Made by a program: the position numbers and the translations under genes. The notes below the pieces were generated by a model. The model was given only the letters and a program-made list of their open reading frames with translations. It did not search any database and was not told where the DNA came from. From Chlorokybus atmophyticus (Eukaryota > Plantae > Mesostigma and Chlorokybus algae), in NCBI GenBank assembly GCA_009103225.1, contig RHPI01003642.1, forward strand, positions 156,451 through 220,450: a stretch of 64,000 nt of DNA, read 5' to 3'. Positions 10,083 to 45,000 of this stretch are shown piece after piece (the stretch's first letter is position 1; each line of letters starts with the position of its first letter).

Positions 10083-11099
10083 TCATGTAGTAGTAACCTG
10101 ACTTTGGAGGGCAGACCGCATCCCATGGATACGGGAACCGCAACTCCGCAGCTGACTCTAATGACTCCCATGAAGGGTACGCATACCTGCCAACATGCAG
10201 TCGTTTGACAATTGAGTAAACATCTCAGGGACCCAGACGACCCGCAACGTACACTTGGATCGGTGGGTCCGATATAATGACTATGAACTGAAGCAGGGAT
10301 GCTCCAGTATTTCTGAGCTGCAATGGAAAATTGTTACTAATACCATGACACTTGTGAATGCATTCGCTTGATGTGAAGCGCAATGGCAACACCTGATGCA
10401 CTGCATCTGGGGCGACTGTGATTGTGTCATTGGCCTGTATGCGCTGTTTGATTGGCGTTGTGCCCCCTGACAGGGCCGTGAGCAGGGTGCCCTCCCCCTG
10501 TGTAGTAAAAGTAAATCATGGACTCAACAACCAACACAGTAGCGCAATTGGTGATGTGGGCAGGCGCTAGCTAACCTGTGTCACTACAAACACTTCCTCA
10601 CAATCGTGCCGATGTATTGGTGTACCAGCACCCGGAGCAAAGCCTTGCAACCAGACTTCAACCTGTTGCAGGCATGCACGCTGTGACGGTGGCCTCTGGA
10701 AGGAACCACTAATGGTGCCATGCATCCAGTTCGGCATAGTGACTGCTAGAGTAGTGACTGTACGCTGACTAACAAAGCTCAATCTGGGTGCAAGCCTGCA
10801 TGCACGCTTACCTTCTTCAAGCCATGGTGAATGGCTCCAGCCAGCACGATGTGAGCCAGTCCAGGCCGGCCGTAGCTGTCTTGGTACATGCTTCCCACGT
10901 GCCTCACTGCAGCTGGCTCTGAAAGAACGCAAAGATCTGTAAACTTTCAAGCAAACCGGACAGATTGCAGGCAAACATGACAAAACAAGACCTGTGGAAT
11001 TGTAAGTCTACCTTGCGGGGGGTGGCAGTCTGCAAGCTTTGCTGCTTCAGCCATATTGAAAACAAGGAGTAACAACCAACACCCCAAAAGTATTCTCAT
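10083..11099 (-). CDS. ABP1: Auxin-binding protein 1-like cupin, secreted, 5 exons
   Basis: Signal peptide MRILLGCWLLLLVFNMAEA; QDSYGRPGLAHIVLAGAIHHGLKK; VEVWLQGFAPGAGTPIHRHDCEEVFVV (box A); GEGTLL...DAVHQ; LRNTG..LQFIVIISDPPIQ; VYAYPSW...LRFPYPWDAVCLQSQVTTT*. Confidence 0.9.
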
Positions 11100-11112
11100 T
11101 CTTCCTGCCACA

Positions 11113-12144
11113 CTATGCGTCCTCGGCCAAGTTCTGAGCACGCTTGGCTCGCTCCAACTCTGCCTGCTGCAGCTGCTTGCGATCGTACTCTCGCTTCTCA
11201 TACCAAAGCGACCCAAGGATGGCAATGAAAGCTGCGGTGCCTATAAACCCGACAACCTGCCAAGTTGTTGCAAATCGTGAGGACAAGATGCTGGTCAAGT
11301 TGACGTGCTGCCACATTAAGCGGAGAACAGCATCGTGGATACATGTCTGTACAGACAGGCTCAATGTGCAAGCTGTTTCTCCAACCATCACTGATGGAGT
11401 CTTTCGTGAACGCAACCCCAACTCAAACACGGTTCAAGCCAAAAGAGAGAGCTGCTGAGCGTATGCATGTGCAAGTTTGTGCAGCCTGCATGCCCACCCC
11501 CAGTGGCCACTCTGACTAGTCAAGCGTGTACAACAAAAGCAAAGTGTCCTGTTGCATGCAGAGTTTCCTGTGGATGCAACGACAGCGGGCAGCAGCAGAC
11601 CTGCTCTCGCAGCGTCCCGCGATAACGGTAGCGCTGGCCTGGCCAAGACATGACAGGCGGAAGGCGCAACTAGCGCAAGCGCTTTCTCTCTAAAGCTCTT
11701 TTCGTAACGAACAATCAAAGCACACGCACGTAAACAGATATCAGCGCTCAAAACTCCCCAACACCCTGCACAGAGCAACCACCCTGCATAAGGACAGGAA
11801 CAACAACACGACAACATGCAAGAACCAAAGCATGCTTGCATGCACGCATGCAGTGACGTATGCATGCACGCATGCACACGTTACTGCATGCAAGCAATAG
11901 AATGTGCACGAAGGATGGATCAAGGCGTGCATGGATCTAAACTACTCACAGGGTTTGGCCTGACGAAGAGCTCGGGGTTGAGGATCCTGAAGAGTCGGGT
12001 GGACGGCTGCTTGTAAGGTCCGCAGGGAGGCACGATAGGGTCCACCGGCGGAGTCGGCGTCGACTGCTTTGCTGCTCCTGCTGCTGCCGCGCCGGCTGCT
12101 TTCCTATGCCCACCGCCCTGCCGTTCTGGCCCGGGCGCTGACAT
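11113..12144 (-). CDS. SMIM8/DUF4500-like small single-pass membrane protein, 2 exons
   Basis: Exon 1 ends RLFRILNPELFVRPNP (GTGAGT donor), matching the recalled SMIM8 motif LFRAVNPELFIKPN. Exon 2 VVGFIGTAAFIAILGSLWYEKREYDRKQLQQAELERAKRAQNLAEDA* has a TM helix. Confidence 0.7.
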
Positions 12145-37795: not shown

Positions 37796-38827
37796 AGGTT
37801 GTAGAGGTACCAGATATATTTCCCATCCTTGAGTGGCATTGAGATACAGCAGTCAAATGTAACGAAGCCCGTGCATCTGCACAGGAGGCTTATCTAGCGA
37901 ACATCTCACGCAACAACCGGTTGCTGCACGCCCTGAAGTTCGGAGCGGGCACTGCCAGGCAAGCCGATGCTGTGCATCCCAGCGTGTTGTCTCTTGAACA
38001 TTTCAAGCAAGGCATCAATGGGTTTTTCTTGCATTCATTTTCTATTTGGCTTTCCAGTGCACCAGGCACGCCACGGCGGTCTCTGTCGGTAGAGGGCGGG
38101 GGAGGGAGTCCGCGGGTCATGCTGCACACGTCGAGGGCAAGGCTGCAGTCCTCCCCACGCGCGCAGACGGTCAGCGCCACAACATAGGCTTCTTGTCCTT
38201 GCACTCTGTGCCTGTTATTGCGCCATACTGCGTTGCTGCTCATATCAAGCTGCGTCTCTGTCATACTTACACACGAGGTGTATCGTGTGCTGACAGGAGT
38301 CACCAAGGTTGGAAGCCAGGAAGCCTGGCAGGGAACCCAGTCCCGAAGGGGCGCTGCCTGCCATTACCTGAGGCTGTGTTGGGGCTGAAAGCGAGTAATG
38401 GAAATCCTTCCTTGCAAGCATGTGCTTGTGTAGTTATAGGCGAGCTTGTTGTACAAAATGTGCCGCAGCAACAGGCACAGTACGCACTCCACCGGACGCT
38501 CCAGGGTGTCAATTGTACCAGCTTGGTGTCACTTCCGGCAGAGCACTGTGTTGCGATAGTTAACACAGGCCTACTATACAGCTATACCCGTGTTCAAGTA
38601 CGCAATAGAACCTGCTGTAGTTCCACTCACCTCTTAAGGGCATTCGTAACCATCAGTTGCTGGTTACGACTACTACTTCATGCACCTGTTGCAGCCCTAC
38701 AGACTGTGTGGCACATCACAAATGCTTATGAAGCACTGAGTAAAGGTCAACCCAATCTCCAACTGTGCAACATGGCGGTGCGCATCAAAGGCAACTAGTT
38801 CCACACGCATTTTAAAAACACAAAGCA

Positions 38828-39994
38828 CTAGTAATTGAACTGCAGTTTTTGCCAAGTTTTCTCCAGATAAGATGGGAGTGGAGCAACAACTGTCAACAGC
38901 TTGCCTCGTCTGCTGGGTATTGGCAGTGCCAACTCTGCCACTAGCTGCGGTGCCAGTGTCACAGATCTGCAGTGCAAATGCAGCTGCTGCGCCGTGACAC
39001 GCGGAGCACCCCCAGTTGCTTCGTACCCATACTTGAAGTCGCCAACAATGGGAGATGACAAGGCAGCTGCACAGTGCAACCGCAGCTGGTGCTTGCGGCC
39101 GGTGATTGGTGCCAGTTCCAGCCAGGTCAGGCCATTGGCAGCTGTACCCATGACTCGGTACTCCGTAATGGCTGACAGCGCATCAGGATGGCCCACTTCG
39201 CAGAGCGTCATTCTCTCGAAGTTGCCTCGCGTGCGAGCTGGACGCACCAGATTCACAATCCTCCCTGCAGACCGAGGCGGCAGCTGTGTGGTCAATGCCC
39301 AATACCGTTTGGTGATGTTGGCAAAGTTTTGGCTGTCCTTCAGTGCCGACGATACGACCTTGGCAGCTTGCTTTGTTCTTGCTAGAAGTAAACAACCCGT
39401 CACTTCGCGATCGAGCCGATGCACAAGTCTGGGCGGTTCGTCACTGTCGAAGCAGAGCGCTGGATTCATCAGCCGATCCAACGACTGCTGCACGCCTGTT
39501 CCCCCTTGCACGGCAAGTCCAGCAGGCTTGTTGATGACAAGGAGATCCTCAGACTTGAACAGCACCAACTCTTGCAACCATGTTGCTGGAGGCAGTGTCT
39601 GCGACGCTTCGCTTTTGCGCACCTGTTGTTGCTGCACCAGTTCCAGCGTGGCTCTTGGAATGCATAGACAGGTGTTGGCAGACAGAACTTCGTCTGCAGA
39701 CACGCGCCTTGTGGTGGTTCCATCGAGCACACTCACTTGGCGGCGTCTGAACAGCCTTTGCAAAGTGCCAAAAGACAACAATGGACAAGCTGACTTCAAC
39801 AACCGGAACGCGGTCTGGTCTGCCTGCACATGCTCATGCTCGCCTTCTACACGAAGAGGTACATACCACGAAGTCAGAGCTTCTGACTCAGTTCCTAACA
39901 ACGTTGATGCTTGAGAGCCAAAGCATGCAGCCAAGGTGTTGACTCTGCTCGAGCACGCCACTTGACGAACAGCTTGCAAGGCTGCACGCCTCAT
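38828..39994 (-). CDS. RluA/RluC-family 23S-type rRNA pseudouridine synthase, intronless, organelle-targeted
   Basis: INKPAGLAVQGG, PRLVHRLDREVTGCLLLART (catalytic D), KRYWAL, AITEYRV, LELAPITGRKHQLRLHCA, PIVGDFKYG, LHLHC. Arg/Ala/Ser-rich N-terminus MRRAALQAVRQVACSSR. Confidence 0.95.
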   Translation of the reverse strand: MRRAALQAVRQVACSSRVNTLAACFGSQASTLLGTESEALTSWYVPLRVEGEHEHVQADQTAFRLLKSACPLLSFGTLQRLFRRRQVSVLDGTTTRRVSADEVLSANTCLCIPRATLELVQQQQVRKSEASQTLPPATWLQELVLFKSEDLLVINKPAGLAVQGGTGVQQSLDRLMNPALCFDSDEPPRLVHRLDREVTGCLLLARTKQAAKVVSSALKDSQNFANITKRYWALTTQLPPRSAGRIVNLVRPARTRGNFERMTLCEVGHPDALSAITEYRVMGTAANGLTWLELAPITGRKHQLRLHCAAALSSPIVGDFKYGYEATGGAPRVTAQQLHLHCRSVTLAPQLVAELALPIPSRRGKLLTVVAPLPSYLEKTWQKLQFNY

Positions 39995-40002
39995 GACTGT
40001 GG

Positions 40003-41478
40003 TCACAACTTCTTGGCCACGACCACATTCAGGGCGAGGTCGTCACCAAAGCCTGGCACGGTGAAGGGTATTGGGTAACTGCCTGTCTTTGCTATCGGCT
40101 CTGATATGTTGAGCAGCCGTGCATCCAACTTAACAAGTAGTTGTTGTTGAACCTGCACAGGCAGCAAACACCTCTTGTTCTTGCATACTGCGACAATGCT
40201 GCAATGCAGATGTTCTCATACACTGCACGATGACATACCGCTGTGACAATGTCGTCAGCACTGATAGGCTTGCGCAACTCCAAACTTCCTTCCTCAGCTG
40301 CTTTTGAGCAGAACCGCCTCAGTTTCTGCAAAGGATGCACAAACTCAGCTGCTTCTCATGAGGCAAGTGTACAAGTACTCGGATCATCTGAGAGCAGGCT
40401 ATACCACGCTGCCAGTCGTCAAACGCAAAACAACTGCAGCAAGCTCGCGCTTTGCTTTCTGTTGCGCCTCATGTGCAAGCTGTGCTACTGTCTTCGCTAC
40501 AGGCTGAGAAGTCTGCAGCCACAACCAGCGAAACGTTAATTGACTGCCTTAGCTAGCAAGCGTGTTCATAAGATATTGCCACAGCGCCGAACCTTCAAGG
40601 CTGCTGCAGCTTGAAGGTTCTTCTCGGTACCCAAATTGACCACCCTACGTGGATACAAAAAGTTGCGTGCAAATCCAGGCGCGACCTTCACCACCTCACC
40701 CTTCTCACCCAGCTTCTTGAAGTCCTGCAATGAGCCAAGGTACTGCAGGTTAGCAGGCCGCACCAGGACAACTTCAATACGAGCTAGTCGTATACCTGCG
40801 TCAGTACGACCTTCAGCTGGGGATTTTCTCCAAAGCAGCGCACGTTGACTGCTGCTATACCTGGTATGAAGGTCGTAACGCCCTGCTCAACAACAACGTG
40901 GGCGTCAGTAAGTGCTGTGACACAATGCGCATGTATGTGCTTGAGCGCCTGCGTGGACGCGCTTACAATCACATCGTCTACATAATCAGTCTCCGCATCA
41001 ACCAGAACGCAGCTTGGCATGGCTGAGAAGTAGTGTGTACAAGCCAGAGCTACAGCCAGAACTACAATGCTTCAGTAAATCACAGCCAGGTTGTTAGGCG
41101 CCTGGCTGTCAGTTAGCAGTCACCACCATACCGTCTCGTATGGTCAGTCCTTTGCACGCTGTGTGACCTGCACCGAACATCATGTGCGCACGGGCTACCT
41201 TAATACTGCTGCAAGTACGTTGCATGGTGCTCAATATCAGGATGCGAGCGGGTAAACTGACCACATGCAACGGGCTTACAGCCGCTGGCAGTTACCATGC
41301 ATCGCTACATATACACGCACGAAAGCACACATAACGCAACTACATTGAATCTCAACGTTGGTGAAGCTGTTCAGCATGCTCTTCAGCAGTTTACCGAACA
41401 AAATACACTCCAAGCAGGCGCCGGCAGCAGTACCTGACGTCCCTTCCCGCCGAAGCCTTGCGCGACCTGCCGCCACAT
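40003..41478 (-). CDS. RPL9: Organellar (bacterial-type) ribosomal protein bL9, 6 exons
   Basis: LKVVLTQ|DFKKLGEKGEVVKVAPGFARNFLYP (L9 N-domain) and ISADDIVTAVQQQL...ISEPIAKTGSYPIP...LALNVVVAKKL* (C-domain). All six exons join in phase 0. First exon/start is the least certain. Confidence 0.9.
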
Positions 41479-42001
41479 GTAGAGAGCTGCGTCTGTACAG
41501 GGTAAAGCACCTGTTGCGTTGTGCCTGCAGCGAGCCCCACAACGATGCCACCGCCAACGACACCGCCAGCACCGTCTCCGCCGCCACCAGCGGTTCAACG
41601 CAATTGTCAGGCAGCGCCATCATAGACTAGCTGGCGTCGCGCAGTGCGGTGTCCTAGCAGAACTGCACTGGCGGGCATCGCACTGCGTCCATATTGCTGC
41701 TTCCCACCCAGCTGCTAAGTTTCAGCCAGCCTGACGCTTAGGCCAGGCCAGGCAGGCGGCGGCGTGAGCGGCTGCGGCAGGGCCGAGAGGCTGCCTGCGC
41801 TGAGGCATTGATCCACGTAGGAGTCTGTTCGGAAGCTTGCTGAAAACAGCGCGAAGGAGCTAGAACAGGAGGGCGTGATGATGTTGCTGCCTGCTTGAGA
41901 GGGCTGCAGTGCGTTGCGTCCTGCGTGAATGTCGTCCGTCTTGGGTGAGCTGCGAGGTTGCACAAGACGTGTGTCTCTGAGAAGCACTGCTTTGGGCGAC
42001 A

Positions 42002-45000
42002 ATGGGTCAAAACGAAGCATCCGGCGCAGCTGCTTTCACCCCTAACGACATTGGTCCCATCTTCAATCTGCTGCAGCAAGCGCTCAACCAGGATCAGCGA
42101 GTGCGCCAGCCTGCTTCAGAAGCCCTTGCATCATGCGAGGATCGTGCCGGCTTCTGCTCCTGCTTGCTGGTAGGTCGCAGTCTCGTTGATTCGCCTTTGT
42201 TTCACTGACATGCGCTATCTGGACGCATCCATAACAGCTGCGTTCCGGCATTAGTTGCGTTCGTGCCTCATGCATCCAAAAAGGGTTGGAATCGGTCTGT
42301 CACACCTCACATTGTGATCTGTTGACATGCATGTTGTCTGTGCTACCTGGCTGAAGCTTGAGAATGATATAGAGTGACCTTACGTGCTGCGTCCCAGGAA
42401 ATTGTGAGCCATGCGTCCACATCAAGCGACGAAAGCGCAAGGTGGCTGGCAGCCGTGCACTTGAAGAACTGCGTGATACGGCATTGGCGAATGCGCAGGG
42501 ATGGCAGGTGTGTACAACTCAGCAGCTGGTTTGCGTGTAGGCAAGTGAGGCTGACTGCTTGTGTGTCGTCTTTCGATTCCTTTGCCTGCCCGTGTCAGTG
42601 GAATTGGCGAAGGTGAGAAAGCTCATCTTCGTTCCAAGTTGCTTGATGTGTTGGGAGATCGCAACAGCCAGGTAGTAAACATAATGCTTACCATTGTCTA
42701 GTCATGTAGTCGTATGCATTGTTGTGCTTTGGTCACGCAATTGTTGTCGATCCATGCGCTATAACGCGACTCGCCTTGCAGATTGCAGTGCAACTAGCAA
42801 TAGTGGCCGCAAAGATTGCTCGATTTGACTTCCCACGTGATTGGTATGTAGCTCTACTCTGTTTTTCTATTGGTAGCCCCTGGCGTGACGTTGCAGGTTG
42901 TGCATCTTGCAAGAGGCCATGTGTGGTTGGTGGTTGAGTGCAACATTATGACACATGCGGACATATCATTTTGCTGTGCGTATATGCCAGGCCACAGCTG
43001 TTTCCAACACTCCTCAGCAAGCTGCAATCACCAGATGTGTTGCTCACAACTCGCATATACCTGGCACTGCACCATATCCTCAAGGAGCTGGCGTCAAAGA
43101 GATTGATGGCTGATCAACGACACTTTGCCCAGGTGAGGTTCCACAAACTGCTGGCTTTGGTGTGAATATGCTGTAGTCGCAGGTAACTCACACAGGAAGT
43201 TGCAGATTGCTTTACAGCTTTTTGACTTGGTTTGGTCACACTGGTGTGCGGATACACAACGAGTTGTATCTGCACTGCCGGCCATATCACAAGCCTCCAT
43301 GGAAAGCATTCCAAACGATGAGGCAGCTGCACTGTTGTTGGCATGTGAGCGATGGTTGCTGGCGCTAAAAGCTCTGCGGCGACTGTTGCTTTTTGGATAT
43401 GGTCAAGCGGATGGGCAAGCAGTGCAGGTACGTGCATGCCGCTAGGCTTGCACTAACATGTGCGTGCAACGCCCAGCATTGTTGACTTGATTCTGTCACA
43501 GTTGATGGGGCGTTTGTCAGCAATGGCAGCAGCATCCATCCCACAGGATGTACCACAAGTGGCAGTCACCGTTCCGGTCTTGCTGCAAGCACTACAGTCT
43601 CTGCTGCCATATTGTGAGTTAAGACTGCTGCTTGAAGAAGATATGACATTGTCTGTTGACCACGTGACCTACATGGACAGTCTGGCACGCACTTCAAAAA
43701 CATGAGCATATGTGAGACAGCCTGCACTGGGCAGCCACTGACTTGCAATGCTTGACAGGGCGTTCCATGCAGCAGAGCCAGCATGCTCTGCGATGGGTTA
43801 CAGAGCGTGGCAGCTTGAAGGTTATGAAGACTATGATTGACATACAGTTAACCCATCCCAGCTCATTTCGACATCAAGCCGTGATGCTGCCCGTGCTGGA
43901 CTTCTGCTACAATCAGATGTGCAGTGCTGAAGACATTGGTGGACCTGCCGTATTTGAACGACTCCTGATACAGTGCATGGTGTTTATCCAAAACGTTGTA
44001 AAGTGCCCAATTTATCGGCCAGGCACAGAAGGTCCTGGTTTGTATGGAGATGTTGGGCCAGCAGGGCGAACCCCTGAGATGGAACAGCAGAAGCGACTGA
44101 TTGCATCTGACGGGAAGTCAACCGTGGACGCCTTTCTCAACCAGGACCGCCTCATATCGCTATGCATCATCCTGGTAGAAAGGTGCGAAGCGTGTTGCAC
44201 ATGCATTCGTACTGGTGATTCGTCGGTGTTTCATCTAGCAATCAATGCGGTGATTGCGGTTTGTGAAATGTGAAAACAACTTAGGTACTTTACGCTCTCT
44301 GTTGCTGATCTAGAAGAGTGGGCTCAGCACCCAGAAGGGTTTCACCAAGAGCAAGACATCACGCACTGGAAGGACAGGCTTCGGCCATGTGCTGAAGCTT
44401 GTTTCTTGGTGTTGATGGAGAAGCACCGCGAGGTAATTGCCTGCATCTGCGTTCGTGTGTCCCTGTTCCTGTCCATGTAACCCATGGGTATGCTGCGCAG
44501 GTTCTTGCTCCCGTCACCACCTCGCACTTGCAGCAAGCTGTTGCAGCCTGCCCACCCTCTCAAAGTGATGATGCACACACATCTGGCCACATCTCTGCCG
44601 AGATGTTGCGGAAGGAAGCTTGGTACAATGCAGCGGGGATTGCCTCATCTGATCTCGCTGATGTCATTGACTTTGAAGCCTGGTACAAGAGTAGCCTTGC
44701 ACTCGAGCTAGCCAACAGGCAACCCAACGGAAGGATATTGAGGAGGCGGGTAGCTTGGCTCCTGGGTTGCTGGGTCAGCAAGATCACGGAAAGTATACGG
44801 CAGTCGGTGTACGCGTCCCTGGTTAACCTCATTGCAGAAGATGATGCCGTCGTGCAGCTCGCAGCCGTCGCGTCATTGCGTGCTGTAATAGACGATTGGC
44901 ACTTTTACGAGCAGTCGTTTTTACCATATGTTGAAACCTGCCTCGCCTACCTGTTTCGCATGCTGCACACTACCACCGAGTTTGACTCGCAGCTGCAAGT

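What the first reader, a model, noticed from the sequence alone, without database searches (positions are those of the whole stretch)
38828..41478. Candidate bicistronic locus: ribosomal protein L9 followed 8 nt later by an intronless RluA-family pseudouridine synthase
Seen: the L9 stop TGA (40005-40003) is followed by CCACAGTC and then the ATG of the synthase (39994). The in-frame GTG at 40006 overlaps the stop (GTGA). There is no room for a 3' UTR, polyA site or promoter. The assembled L9 protein has no internal Met, and the downstream ORF has no introns. Established: polycistronic nuclear mRNAs are described in chlorophytes such as Chlamydomonas reinhardtii and Chromochloris zofingiensis, with leaky scanning proposed as a mechanism. 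Inference: an operon-like unit co-expressing two organellar large-subunit ribosome factors. Three out-of-frame AUGs in the L9 CDS mean reinitiation is as plausible as leaky scanning.
Basis: partly seen in the sequence, partly recalled or inferred. Interest (0 to 1): 0.75.

Follow-up and report, generated by a model that had tools for sequence, protein, structure and literature searches.

The report
Two-gene mitoribosome mRNA in Chlorokybus
In the early-branching streptophyte alga Chlorokybus, a spliced gene for mitochondrial ribosomal protein L9 and an intronless gene for a mitochondrial rRNA pseudouridine synthase lie 8 bases apart and assemble as one spliced RNA, a likely new example of the two-proteins-from-one-mRNA layout known from green algae.

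Summary
On the minus strand, a six-exon, 202-residue L9 gene with no internal Met ends at TGA 40005-40003. Eight bases later (CCACAGTC), at ATG 39994, a 388-residue intronless RluA/RluC-type ORF begins.

- **Organism:** Chlorokybus, a streptophyte alga. Its public gene model Chlat1/5085 fuses the two ORFs through a 10-nt and a 203-nt invented intron. The RNA contigs contradict both.
- **Proteins:** L9 matches plant mitoribosome bL9m best. ORF2 is the Viridiplantae orthologue of mitochondrial PUS4/RPUSD4/mt-LAF3, with the catalytic HRLD motif intact.
- **RNA evidence:** Contigs from two studies are spliced at all five L9 introns and run unbroken across the spacer. One 1,821-nt contig spans both ORFs. 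The contigs stop in the intergenic gaps on either side (about 230 and 240-300 nt).
- **Limit:** These are short-read contigs, so a single molecule is not proven.
- **Translation signals:** The weak L9 start context, short 5' UTR and weak internal AUGs fit leaky scanning. AUG depletion is not significant.
- **Conservation:** The pairing was absent at seven homologous loci elsewhere.

This is a new member of a known kind. The scan already holds the same layout on another piece of this genome (s1-192572).

The parts
41512..41738 (.). About 228-nt gap between the 5' end of the L9/PUS RNA contig and the end of the contig of the divergently oriented importin-like gene. Presumed shared (bidirectional) promoter region.
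   Evidence: table 8: the X1 record 2 joint side of 79 nt reaches about 41511, and X1 record 4 ends at 41739.
41479..41511 (-). 5' UTR of at least 33 nt, with no AUG. The upstream ATGs at 41623/41620 used by the public model lie outside the RNA contig.
41434..41478 (-). L9 exon 1 coding part. ATG at 41478-41476 in weak context CTCTACATGT (T at -3, T at +4). Start of a basic presequence.
40883..41433 (-). Intron 1 (551 nt, GT..AG), much longer than the other four introns.
40796..40882 (-). L9 exon 2 (87 nt)
40593..40724 (-). L9 exon 3 (132 nt), holding the Ribosomal_L9_N domain. Intron 2 is 40725-40795 (71 nt).
40405..40512 (-). L9 exon 4 (108 nt), with an out-of-frame ATG at 40472 (17-codon ORF). 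Intron 3 is 40513-40592 (80 nt).
40239..40325 (-). L9 exon 5 (87 nt). Intron 4 is 40326-40404 (79 nt).
40003..40152 (-). L9 coding part of the last exon, including stop TGA 40005-40003. Out-of-frame ATGs lie at 40124 (10 codons) and 40028 (46 codons, running past the ORF2 start to 39888). Intron 5 is 40153-40238 (86 nt).
39995..40002 (-). 8-nt inter-ORF spacer CCACAGTC. ORF2 is in a different frame from L9.
38828..39994 (-). ORF2: a 388-aa intronless RluA/RluC-type pseudouridine synthase, orthologous to plant mitochondrial PUS4 and human RPUSD4. ATG context is ACAGTCATGA (G at -3). HRLDREVTG catalytic motif at residues 192-200. Basic, acid-free first 35 residues.
38765..38827 (-). 3' UTR as far as contigs reach. 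The X2 contig ends at 38765 and the X1 contig ends at 38825. No AATAAA, ATTAAA or TGTAA here or anywhere in ORF2.

Best explanation
This is a nuclear bicistronic gene of Chlorokybus. One promoter, in the roughly 228-nt gap shared with a divergent importin-like gene, drives one pre-mRNA. Its five introns, all inside the L9 part, are removed. The mature mRNA of about 1.85-1.9 kb carries ORF1 (mitochondrial ribosomal protein bL9m, 202 aa), 8 nt of spacer, and ORF2 (mitochondrial large-subunit rRNA pseudouridine synthase/assembly factor of the PUS4/RPUSD4/mt-LAF3 type, 388 aa).

Each ORF has its own basic N-terminal presequence, so two separate precursors are made and imported. Most ribosomes start at the first AUG and make L9. 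A fraction of scanning 40S subunits pass this weak AUG and three weak out-of-frame AUGs and start at the better-placed ORF2 AUG (leaky scanning). The result would be much structural protein and little enzyme from one message.

Shown: the anatomy, the protein identities, the splicing, and RNA continuity across the junction in contigs. Inferred: that it is a single molecule, that there are no monocistronic forms, that ORF2 is translated, the translation mechanism, and mitochondrial targeting.
For: - **Spliced contigs:** In one search, the X1 contig of 1,821 nt is spliced at all five GT..AG introns, so it is RNA-derived. It is colinear from about 41511 to 38825 and therefore spans both ORFs with 0 mismatches.
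- **Second study:** An X2 contig of 877 nt from 2013 carries the same five joints and runs 275 nt into ORF2. Further X2 contigs cover the rest to 38765.
- **Internal control:** The same assemblies break in the gaps on either side, about 230 nt upstream (41511/41739) and about 240-300 nt downstream (38522 versus 38765/38825).
- **No polyadenylation trace:** No loose ends and no joint were reported inside ORF2.
- **No room for other signals:** An 8-nt spacer leaves no space for a promoter or poly(A) site.
- **Start contexts:** The L9 AUG has T at -3 and T at +4. Internal AUGs have C/A, T/C and T/T. The ORF2 AUG has G at -3.
- **Published hallmarks:** The 5' UTR is at least 33 nt. A short UTR, weak ORF1 context and weak internal AUGs are the hallmarks reported for chlorophyte bicistrons (PMC11892635).
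- **L9 identity:** Its best solved relatives are plant bL9m (9evs 3.2e-17, 6xyw 5e-15), against chloroplast bL9c at 1.9e-5. TIGR00158 scores 65.6 bits, above its cut-off.
- **ORF2 identity:** Its best solved relatives are trypanosome mitoribosome assembly factor mt-LAF3 and human RPUSD4 (1e-25). Its named relatives are 'RNA pseudouridine synthase 4, mitochondrial'. It sits inside a Viridiplantae clade (SH-aLRT 97).
- **Intact and targeted:** The HRLD motif is intact and both N-termini are basic and acid-free for 33-35 residues.
Against: - Contigs assembled from short reads merge overlapping transcripts. A monocistronic ORF2 mRNA starting inside the L9 gene, or L9 mRNAs ending inside ORF2, would give the same contig.
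- No raw reads, long reads, TSS or poly(A) data could be examined.
- AUG depletion upstream of ORF2 is weak: 3 observed against 5.7 in dinucleotide shuffles (P=0.09), and no depletion against synonymous-codon permutation.
- Zero internal Met also occurs in 17-29% of L9 homologues.
- The AUG at 40028 opens a 46-codon ORF that overlaps the ORF2 start and would divert some scanning ribosomes.
- The L9-PUS4 adjacency was not found at seven homologous loci in other organisms, so conservation gives no support.
- There is no evidence that ORF2 protein is made.
Confidence: 0.6

Rival explanations
1. There are two overlapping transcription units. L9 mRNA reads through ORF2 as a long 3' UTR, or ends inside it. 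The synthase is actually translated from a separate, shorter mRNA whose start site lies inside the last L9 exon or an L9 intron. The contigs simply merge the two.
For: The read-laying output itself warns that a contig across two genes shows no single transcript. Partially polycistronic loci with monocistronic forms are common in chlorophytes (PMC7896298). The genome is compact, with promoter-sized gaps of only about 230 nt. The pairing is not conserved elsewhere.
Against: No contig begins or branches inside the L9 gene in either run. In X2, the contig reaching 275 nt into ORF2 carries all five L9 splice joints. An internal promoter would have to sit within coding exons or 71-86-nt introns. The context pattern of the five AUGs fits scanning from the L9 cap.
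Confidence: 0.22
2. One bicistronic mRNA exists, but ORF2 is reached by termination-coupled reinitiation. After finishing L9, the 40S subunit stays on the mRNA and restarts at the AUG 8 nt downstream, or at the GUG overlapping the stop. Leaky scanning is not the route.
For: The stop and start are only 8 nt apart, and a GUG in the ORF2 frame overlaps the stop as GUGA. The three out-of-frame AUGs and the overlapping 46-codon ORF are obstacles for scanning. PMC11892635 does not fully exclude reinitiation.
Against: By established knowledge, reinitiation efficiency falls steeply after long ORFs, and ORF1 here is 202 codons. Classical reinitiation also needs a longer spacer to reload the initiator tRNA complex. 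No UGGGA (TURBS motif 1) occurs anywhere upstream of ORF2. In-vivo tests in green algae favoured leaky scanning (PMC11892635). The weak ORF1 context is what leaky scanning predicts, not reinitiation.
Confidence: 0.12
3. ORF2 is carried passively in the L9 3' UTR and is translated little or not at all: a gene relic or a silent passenger. The functional synthase would then be encoded elsewhere.
For: No protein evidence exists. ORF2 has a long branch in the tree (1.64). It is intronless next to an intron-dense gene, which could suggest a retrocopy.
Against: The 388-codon frame is intact, with a full PF00849 domain (1.1e-27), the catalytic HRLD motif and a presequence-like N-terminus. It is the only Chlorokybus relative listed. 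An orthologue is also a single uninterrupted ORF on a 12.7-kb genomic contig of a land-plant-like relative (L002), so lack of introns need not mean retroposition.
Confidence: 0.05
4. A single fusion protein, L9-synthase, is made by splicing out the stop and spacer, as in the public gene model Chlat1/5085 (570 aa).
For: The public model P0001 carries both Pfam domains. Its 203-nt intron (40026-39824) has GT..AG ends.
Against: RNA contigs of two runs are continuous across 39824-40026 and across the model's 10-nt 'intron' at 41467-41476. No joints or deletions are reported there. A 10-nt intron is a frame-fixing artefact. The model's start at 41620 lies outside the RNA contig. The fusion would delete the ORF2 presequence. 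No other protein combining the two domains was found.
Confidence: 0.03

Closest known systems
Exclusively polycistronic nuclear loci of chlorophyte green algae (Gallaher et al. 2021, PMC7896298; Duenas et al. 2025, PMC11892635), for example the mitochondrial TOM22-like/SDHAF3-like bicistron
   Same: There are two non-overlapping same-strand ORFs with a very short spacer; published medians are 40 nt in Auxenochlorella and 183 nt in Chlamydomonas. ORF1 is about 600 nt, the median of the 2021 Chlamydomonas set. The 5' UTR is short, the ORF1 start context is weak and the ORF2 context is better. Both products serve the mitochondrion.
   Different: The organism is a streptophyte alga; the published sets cover chlorophytes only. 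The gene pair is not in the text or held supplements of those papers. Support comes from short-read contigs, not Iso-Seq, ChIP or proteomics. AUG depletion is not significant. ORF1 is longer than the refined-set medians of 291-357 nt.
CDC26-TTM3 bicistronic transcript of land plants and green algae (cited in PMC11892635)
   Same: It is a nuclear bicistron in the streptophyte lineage in which the downstream enzyme ORF is translated from the same mRNA as an upstream ORF.
   Different: CDC26 is a very short ORF and the pair is deeply conserved across Viridiplantae. Here ORF1 is a full 202-aa ribosomal protein and the pairing appears lineage-restricted.
Readthrough 'polycistronic' transcripts of Arabidopsis suppressed by NMD (PMC9768141)
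   Same: One RNA covers two neighbouring same-strand genes.
   Different: Those are minor by-products of genes that each have their own promoter and terminator. Here 8 nt separate the ORFs, and the joined form is the form assembled at high depth.
bL9m of plant mitoribosomes (PDB 9evs, 9gyt, 6xyw)
   Same: The alignment is full-length (query 31-181 to chain 42-198) and includes a comparable N-terminal extension.
   Different: Identity is only about 30-35%. The Chlorokybus protein has no internal Met.
Mitochondrial RluC-like pseudouridine synthases: plant PUS4, human RPUSD4 (5uba), trypanosome mt-LAF3 (6yxx)
   Same: It has the PF00849 catalytic domain and the HRLD motif, and it belongs to the Viridiplantae PUS4 clade.
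   Different: It is shorter than plant PUS4 (388 aa against about 475). The S4 domain is not detected by Pfam. It has a long branch in the tree.

Membership tests
Green-algal type polycistronic nuclear mRNA | Two or more complete, non-overlapping ORFs on one strand with an inter-ORF distance far shorter than normal intergenic spacing | tested here: met
   The spacer is 8 nt, against gaps of about 230-300 nt to the neighbouring transcripts.
Green-algal type polycistronic nuclear mRNA | Single mature, spliced, polyadenylated molecules span all ORFs (full-length reads) | tested here: inconclusive
   Spliced contigs from two studies span the junction, and one spans both ORFs. Contigs cannot show single molecules, and no raw or long reads were available.
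Green-algal type polycistronic nuclear mRNA | No monocistronic forms: one TSS and one poly(A) site | not testable with these tools
   This needs CAGE, 5'-RACE, 3'-end sequencing or long reads. The only data are the absence of contig ends or loose ends inside the unit.
Green-algal type polycistronic nuclear mRNA | Both polypeptides are produced | not testable with these tools
   No proteomic or ribosome-profiling data are on hand.
Green-algal type polycistronic nuclear mRNA | Weak Kozak-like context at ORF1 and at internal AUGs, a better one at ORF2, and a short 5' UTR | tested here: met
   The -3/+4 bases are T/T at ORF1; C/A, T/C and T/T at the internal AUGs; and G/A at ORF2. The 5' UTR is at least 33 nt. 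This was judged by the general -3 purine/+4 G rule, not by a Chlorokybus-specific matrix.
Green-algal type polycistronic nuclear mRNA | Depletion of AUG upstream of ORF2 | tested here: inconclusive
   There are 3 AUGs against 5.7 expected (P=0.09). There is no depletion against synonymous-codon permutation. Zero internal Met occurs in 17-29% of homologues.
Ribosomal protein bL9, mitochondrial form (bL9m) | L9 N-terminal domain and full-length L9 architecture | tested here: met
   PF01281 scores 8e-17. PF03948 is marginal (22.0 bits against a 23.2 cut-off). TIGR00158 scores 65.6 bits against a 58.6 cut-off, covering profile positions 1-132 of 148.
Ribosomal protein bL9, mitochondrial form (bL9m) | Closer to mitoribosomal than to plastid or bacterial L9 | tested here: met
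   Plant bL9m chains score 3e-17 to 5e-15, bacterial L9 about 4e-13 and plastid bL9c 2e-5. The nearest library protein is a Mesostigma protein (1e-19).
Ribosomal protein bL9, mitochondrial form (bL9m) | Imported into mitochondria and present in the mitoribosome | not testable with these tools
   The only evidence is a presequence-like N-terminus: 5 K/R, with the first acidic residue at position 34.
RluA-family pseudouridine synthase, mitochondrial PUS4/RPUSD4 group | PseudoU_synth_2 catalytic domain with the catalytic Asp in the HRLD motif | tested here: met
   PF00849 scores 1.1e-27, covering profile positions 1-152 of 152. HRLDREVTG is at residues 192-200.
RluA-family pseudouridine synthase, mitochondrial PUS4/RPUSD4 group | Orthology with plant mitochondrial PUS4 rather than recent bacterial origin | tested here: met
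   It lies inside a clade of land-plant and chlorophyte sequences (SH-aLRT 97), apart from alphaproteobacterial RluC. This was a quick tree and the query has a long branch.
RluA-family pseudouridine synthase, mitochondrial PUS4/RPUSD4 group | Pseudouridylation of mitochondrial LSU rRNA, or a role in LSU assembly | not testable with these tools
   This is inferred from its relatives.

The most novel reading that the evidence does not exclude
Bicistronic nuclear mRNAs are not a chlorophyte speciality. They are a working mode of gene expression in the earliest-diverging streptophytes as well. Here it would form a true functional 'mini-operon', in which a mitoribosomal structural protein and the enzyme or assembly factor that modifies the same subunit's rRNA are co-transcribed. 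Their ratio would be fixed by leaky scanning. Together with the other candidate bicistrons noted in this genome, that would push the origin of the mechanism back to the common ancestor of Viridiplantae.
Probability: 0.35. Interest if true: 0.6.

Novelty: new member of a known kind. Interest (0 to 1): 0.45.

Why it matters
If confirmed with full-length reads, it extends nuclear polycistronic expression from chlorophytes to a basal streptophyte alga. It would also be an unusually clear case of functional coupling, with a mitoribosomal large-subunit protein and a large-subunit rRNA pseudouridine synthase/assembly factor on one mRNA. Most published algal bicistrons pair proteins of unknown function.

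There is also a practical consequence. The public Chlorokybus gene model (Chlat1/5085, 570 aa) is a chimera. It fuses two proteins, deletes the synthase presequence and adds a false N-terminus. Such forced fusions may hide other bicistrons in this and other algal annotations.

Tried and rejected
1. **Exact-protein look-up of ORF2 and of the Mesostigma L9 (P0236).** I wanted transcript or genome context, but neither is on record. The sister lineage Mesostigma therefore could not be tested.
2. **Word search with the L9 part.** It gave only two bacterial hits. The full HMMER search was needed to find the eukaryotic bL9m relatives.
3. **Search for other proteins combining L9 and PseudoU_synth_2.** None was found besides the Chlorokybus model.
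4. **Context of PUS4 or L9 homologues.** I checked seven loci: L001, L002, L007 and L005/L006 (Logan contigs), plus Elliptochloris L003 and Trebouxia L004. None showed the adjacency.
5. **AUG and Met depletion statistics.** They were not significant.
6. **Poly(A)-signal motifs (AATAAA, ATTAAA, TGTAA).** They are absent both inside and after ORF2, so they are uninformative.
7. **TURBS motif 1.** It is absent.
8. **Rfam on 38300-42100.** No match.
9. **Recent bacterial transfer of the intronless ORF2.** Rejected by the tree.
10. **Published bicistron lists.** The terms pseudouridine, L9 and MRPL9 were not found. The 2021 paper's supplements are not held.
11. **Spliced L9 protein in search tools.** My own joined L9 protein was used only inside scripts to check the frame. 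Searches used single exons by reference and the stored public model part P0001:50-237, which equals L9 residues 6-193. The first 5 and last 9 residues were therefore not searched.
Full report
**Observation.**
The sequence is ...AAG AAG TTG TGA (stop 40005-40003), then CCACAGTC, then ATG AGG CGT... (ATG 39994). The downstream frame stays open for 388 codons to TAG 38830-38828. A GTG at 40006 overlaps the stop as GTGA and is in the ORF2 frame, which is open back to a TGA at 40045-40043. Pfam finds Ribosomal_L9_N in the exon at 40593-40724 (1.8e-14) and a complete PseudoU_synth_2 domain in ORF2 (1.1e-27).

**RNA evidence.**
Four public runs hold parts of the stretch, and I laid all four on 38300-42100. 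Run X1 (study P1, 2021) has one contig of 1,821 nt at depth 323. It lies on 38825-40150, 40237-40325, 40405-40512, 40593-40723, 40795-40881 and then on 79 nt from 41433 upward, with no mismatch. The five skipped segments are GT..AG introns on the minus strand: 551, 71, 80, 79 and 86 nt. The contig is therefore RNA-derived, and it runs from the L9 5' UTR to 3 nt past the ORF2 stop.

Run X2 is from a different study (2013). It has an 877-nt contig with the same five joints that continues 275 nt into ORF2, to 39719. Two further X2 contigs cover 39491-39728 and 38765-39442.

The same assemblies end at 41511 and 41739 on the upstream side, and at 38765/38825 and 38522 on the downstream side. They therefore break in gaps of about 230 nt upstream and 240-300 nt downstream, but not at the 8-nt spacer. 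No joints, indels or loose ends were reported inside ORF2. The limit of this evidence is that these are de Bruijn contigs, which merge overlapping transcripts. They show neither single molecules nor ends. Runs X3 and X4 laid nothing.

**Gene model.**
Joining the exons in a script, for the frame check only, gives an mRNA of at least 1,820 nt.

| Feature | Position in mRNA | Window coordinate | Notes |
|---|---|---|---|
| L9 AUG | 34 | 41478 | 202 codons, Met only at position 1, stop TGA |
| Out-of-frame AUG 1 | 338 | 40472 | frame +1, 17-codon ORF |
| Out-of-frame AUG 2 | 521 | 40124 | frame +1, 10-codon ORF |
| Out-of-frame AUG 3 | 617 | 40028 | frame +1, 46-codon ORF overlapping the ORF2 start |
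| ORF2 AUG | 651 | 39994 | 388 codons |

The start contexts (-3/+4) are T/T for L9; C/A, T/C and T/T for the internal AUGs; and G/A for ORF2.

**Organism and the public annotation.**
The best database relative of ORF2 is EukProt jgi/Chlat1/5085 (Chrsp33S05103), a 570-aa protein carrying both PF01281 and PF00849. The window is therefore from Chlorokybus, a streptophyte alga. That model (P0001) matches the window residue for residue where it overlaps. It has three problems:
- It starts at an upstream ATG (41620).
- It removes a 10-nt 'intron' (GTGGCGGCAG, 41476-41467) to change frame.
- It removes a 203-nt 'intron' (40026-39824) that deletes the last 7 L9 residues, the stop, the spacer and the first 61 residues of ORF2.

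The RNA contigs are continuous over both places, and they begin downstream of 41620. The fused model is therefore an annotation artefact. No other protein in the word search combines the two domains.

**Identity of the two proteins.**
The L9 part was searched as P0001:50-237, which equals residues 6-193.
- Its best solved relatives are plant mitoribosomal bL9m: 9evs 3.2e-17, 9gyt 6.7e-17 and 6xyw 5e-15.
- Bacterial L9 follows at about 4e-13, and plastid bL9c is far behind at 1.9e-5.
- It passes the NCBIfam L9 equivalog cut-off, 65.6 against 58.6 bits.
- In the full HMMER search, the nearest protein is from Mesostigma viride (P0236, 1e-19), the sister lineage of Chlorokybus. Next come proteins of Mesotaenium, Tetraselmis, Myrmecia, a fern and a conifer.

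For ORF2:
- Its best solved relatives are the trypanosome mitoribosome assembly factor mt-LAF3 (6yxx/7aoi, 1e-25) and human RPUSD4 (5uba, 2.4e-25).
- Its named relatives are 'RNA pseudouridine synthase 4, mitochondrial' of land plants (33-36% identity) and alphaproteobacterial RluC (37-41%).
- A quick maximum-likelihood tree of 39 sequences places it inside a clade of land-plant and chlorophyte sequences (SH-aLRT 97), separate from the alphaproteobacterial sequences. The gene is therefore vertically inherited, not a recent transfer. Its branch is long (1.64).
- The catalytic motif HRLDREVTG is present.
- Both ORFs begin with basic stretches free of acidic residues for 33-35 residues. This fits separate mitochondrial presequences, and so separate translation starts. 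Targeting itself is inferred.

**Mechanism.**
Nuclear polycistronic mRNAs are established in chlorophytes. Gallaher et al. 2021 report 87 and 173 exclusively polycistronic loci, with a median ORF1 of 600 nt in Chlamydomonas (PMC7896298). In-vivo tests favour leaky scanning. The reported hallmarks are short 5' UTRs (medians 54-83 nt), weak ORF1 contexts, weak internal AUGs, short spacers (medians 40-183 nt) and AUG depletion (PMC11892635).

This locus shows most of them: a short spacer, a 5' UTR of at least 33 nt, and the expected context pattern. It does not show significant AUG depletion. There are 3 AUGs against 5.7 in dinucleotide shuffles (P=0.09), and none against synonymous-codon permutation. 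Of L9 homologues, 17-29% also lack internal Met.

Classical reinitiation is disfavoured, by established knowledge, after a 202-codon ORF with an 8-nt spacer. The viral termination-reinitiation motif UGGGA is absent. I therefore favour leaky scanning, with reinitiation as a minority possibility. The overlapping 46-codon ORF from 40028 should lower ORF2 yield. That would suit an enzyme needed in far smaller amounts than a ribosomal protein.

**Conservation.**
I could not find the pairing elsewhere.
- **PUS4 homologues.** None has an L9-like sequence upstream by tblastn. The loci checked were the genomes of Elliptochloris (L003) and Trebouxia (L004), a 12.7-kb genomic contig (L002) and two transcript contigs (L001, L007).
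- **L9 homologues.** Transcript contigs of an L9 relative (L005/L006) have no synthase downstream.
- **Arabidopsis.** By my own knowledge, the Arabidopsis genes At5g53070 and At3g19440 lie on different chromosomes. The latter is named in hit P0017.
- **Mesostigma.** It could not be checked, because no contig is on record.

ORF2's lack of introns is not in itself a mark of retroposition. The L002 orthologue is also one uninterrupted ORF, whereas the trebouxiophyte orthologues are split into several pieces.

**Literature and earlier notes.**
No paper in the library links nuclear polycistrons with Chlorokybus or streptophyte algae. The land-plant CDC26-TTM3 bicistron is the streptophyte precedent. 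The scan's notebook already holds the same layout on 'another piece' of this genome (s1-192572), with a follow-up that reached the same reading. It also holds other candidate bicistrons in Chlorokybus: s1-078875, s1-183755, and s1-177357 in this window. These are unchecked AI notes and not independent evidence.

**Verdict.**
The most likely reading is a bicistronic nuclear mRNA for two mitochondrial large-subunit factors, with ORF2 translated by leaky scanning. I put the joint confidence at about 0.6, and at about 0.75 for the single-mRNA part alone. The main rival is a pair of overlapping transcription units with an internal start site (about 0.2). This is a new member of a known kind, of moderate interest, and it corrects a chimeric public gene model.

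Noticed in passing
window 41435 (exon-1 donor of the L9 gene), run X2: One X2 contig lies on exon 1 down to the donor site and then continues for 255 letters that are not in the laid stretch. The adjacent 30 letters are absent from the whole 64-kb window. This is either a chimeric contig or exon 1 joined to an exon elsewhere, or it comes from a second copy of the locus.
   Followed up: partly
window 41739-42616 (+ strand): An importin-beta-N-terminal-like gene starts head-to-head with the L9 gene, with ORF pieces at 42002-42208 and 42374-42616. Its RNA contig (4,669 nt in X1) ends at 41739. That leaves about 228 nt for a presumably bidirectional promoter.
   Followed up: no
window 41155-41316: A low-depth (3.1) X1 contig lies inside the unusually long first intron, which is 551 nt against 71-86 nt for the other four. 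It may be unspliced precursor, DNA carry-over or a small separate RNA. There was no Rfam match.
   Followed up: partly
window 38825 versus 38765: The high-depth X1 contig stops 3 nt after the ORF2 stop codon, while the X2 contig runs 63 nt further. This may reflect several very proximal poly(A) sites or a polymorphism. No canonical poly(A) signal is present.
   Followed up: no
public model Chlat1/5085 (P0001) on window 41620-38828: The reference annotation fuses the two ORFs with a 10-nt and a 203-nt invented intron and a false upstream start. Similar forced fusions could mask other bicistrons in this annotation.
   Followed up: yes
window 10083-12144: The scan's notes list a second candidate bicistron in this same window (SMIM8-like micro-protein upstream of ABP1, 13-nt spacer; s1-177357). 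I did not examine it.
   Followed up: no
L002:99-1583: In a 12.7-kb Logan genomic contig (SRR33208241) of a land-plant-like relative, the PUS4 orthologue is one uninterrupted 494-codon ORF. The neighbouring lipoxygenase gene is split into pieces. Lack of introns in PUS4 may therefore be old in streptophytes.
   Followed up: partly
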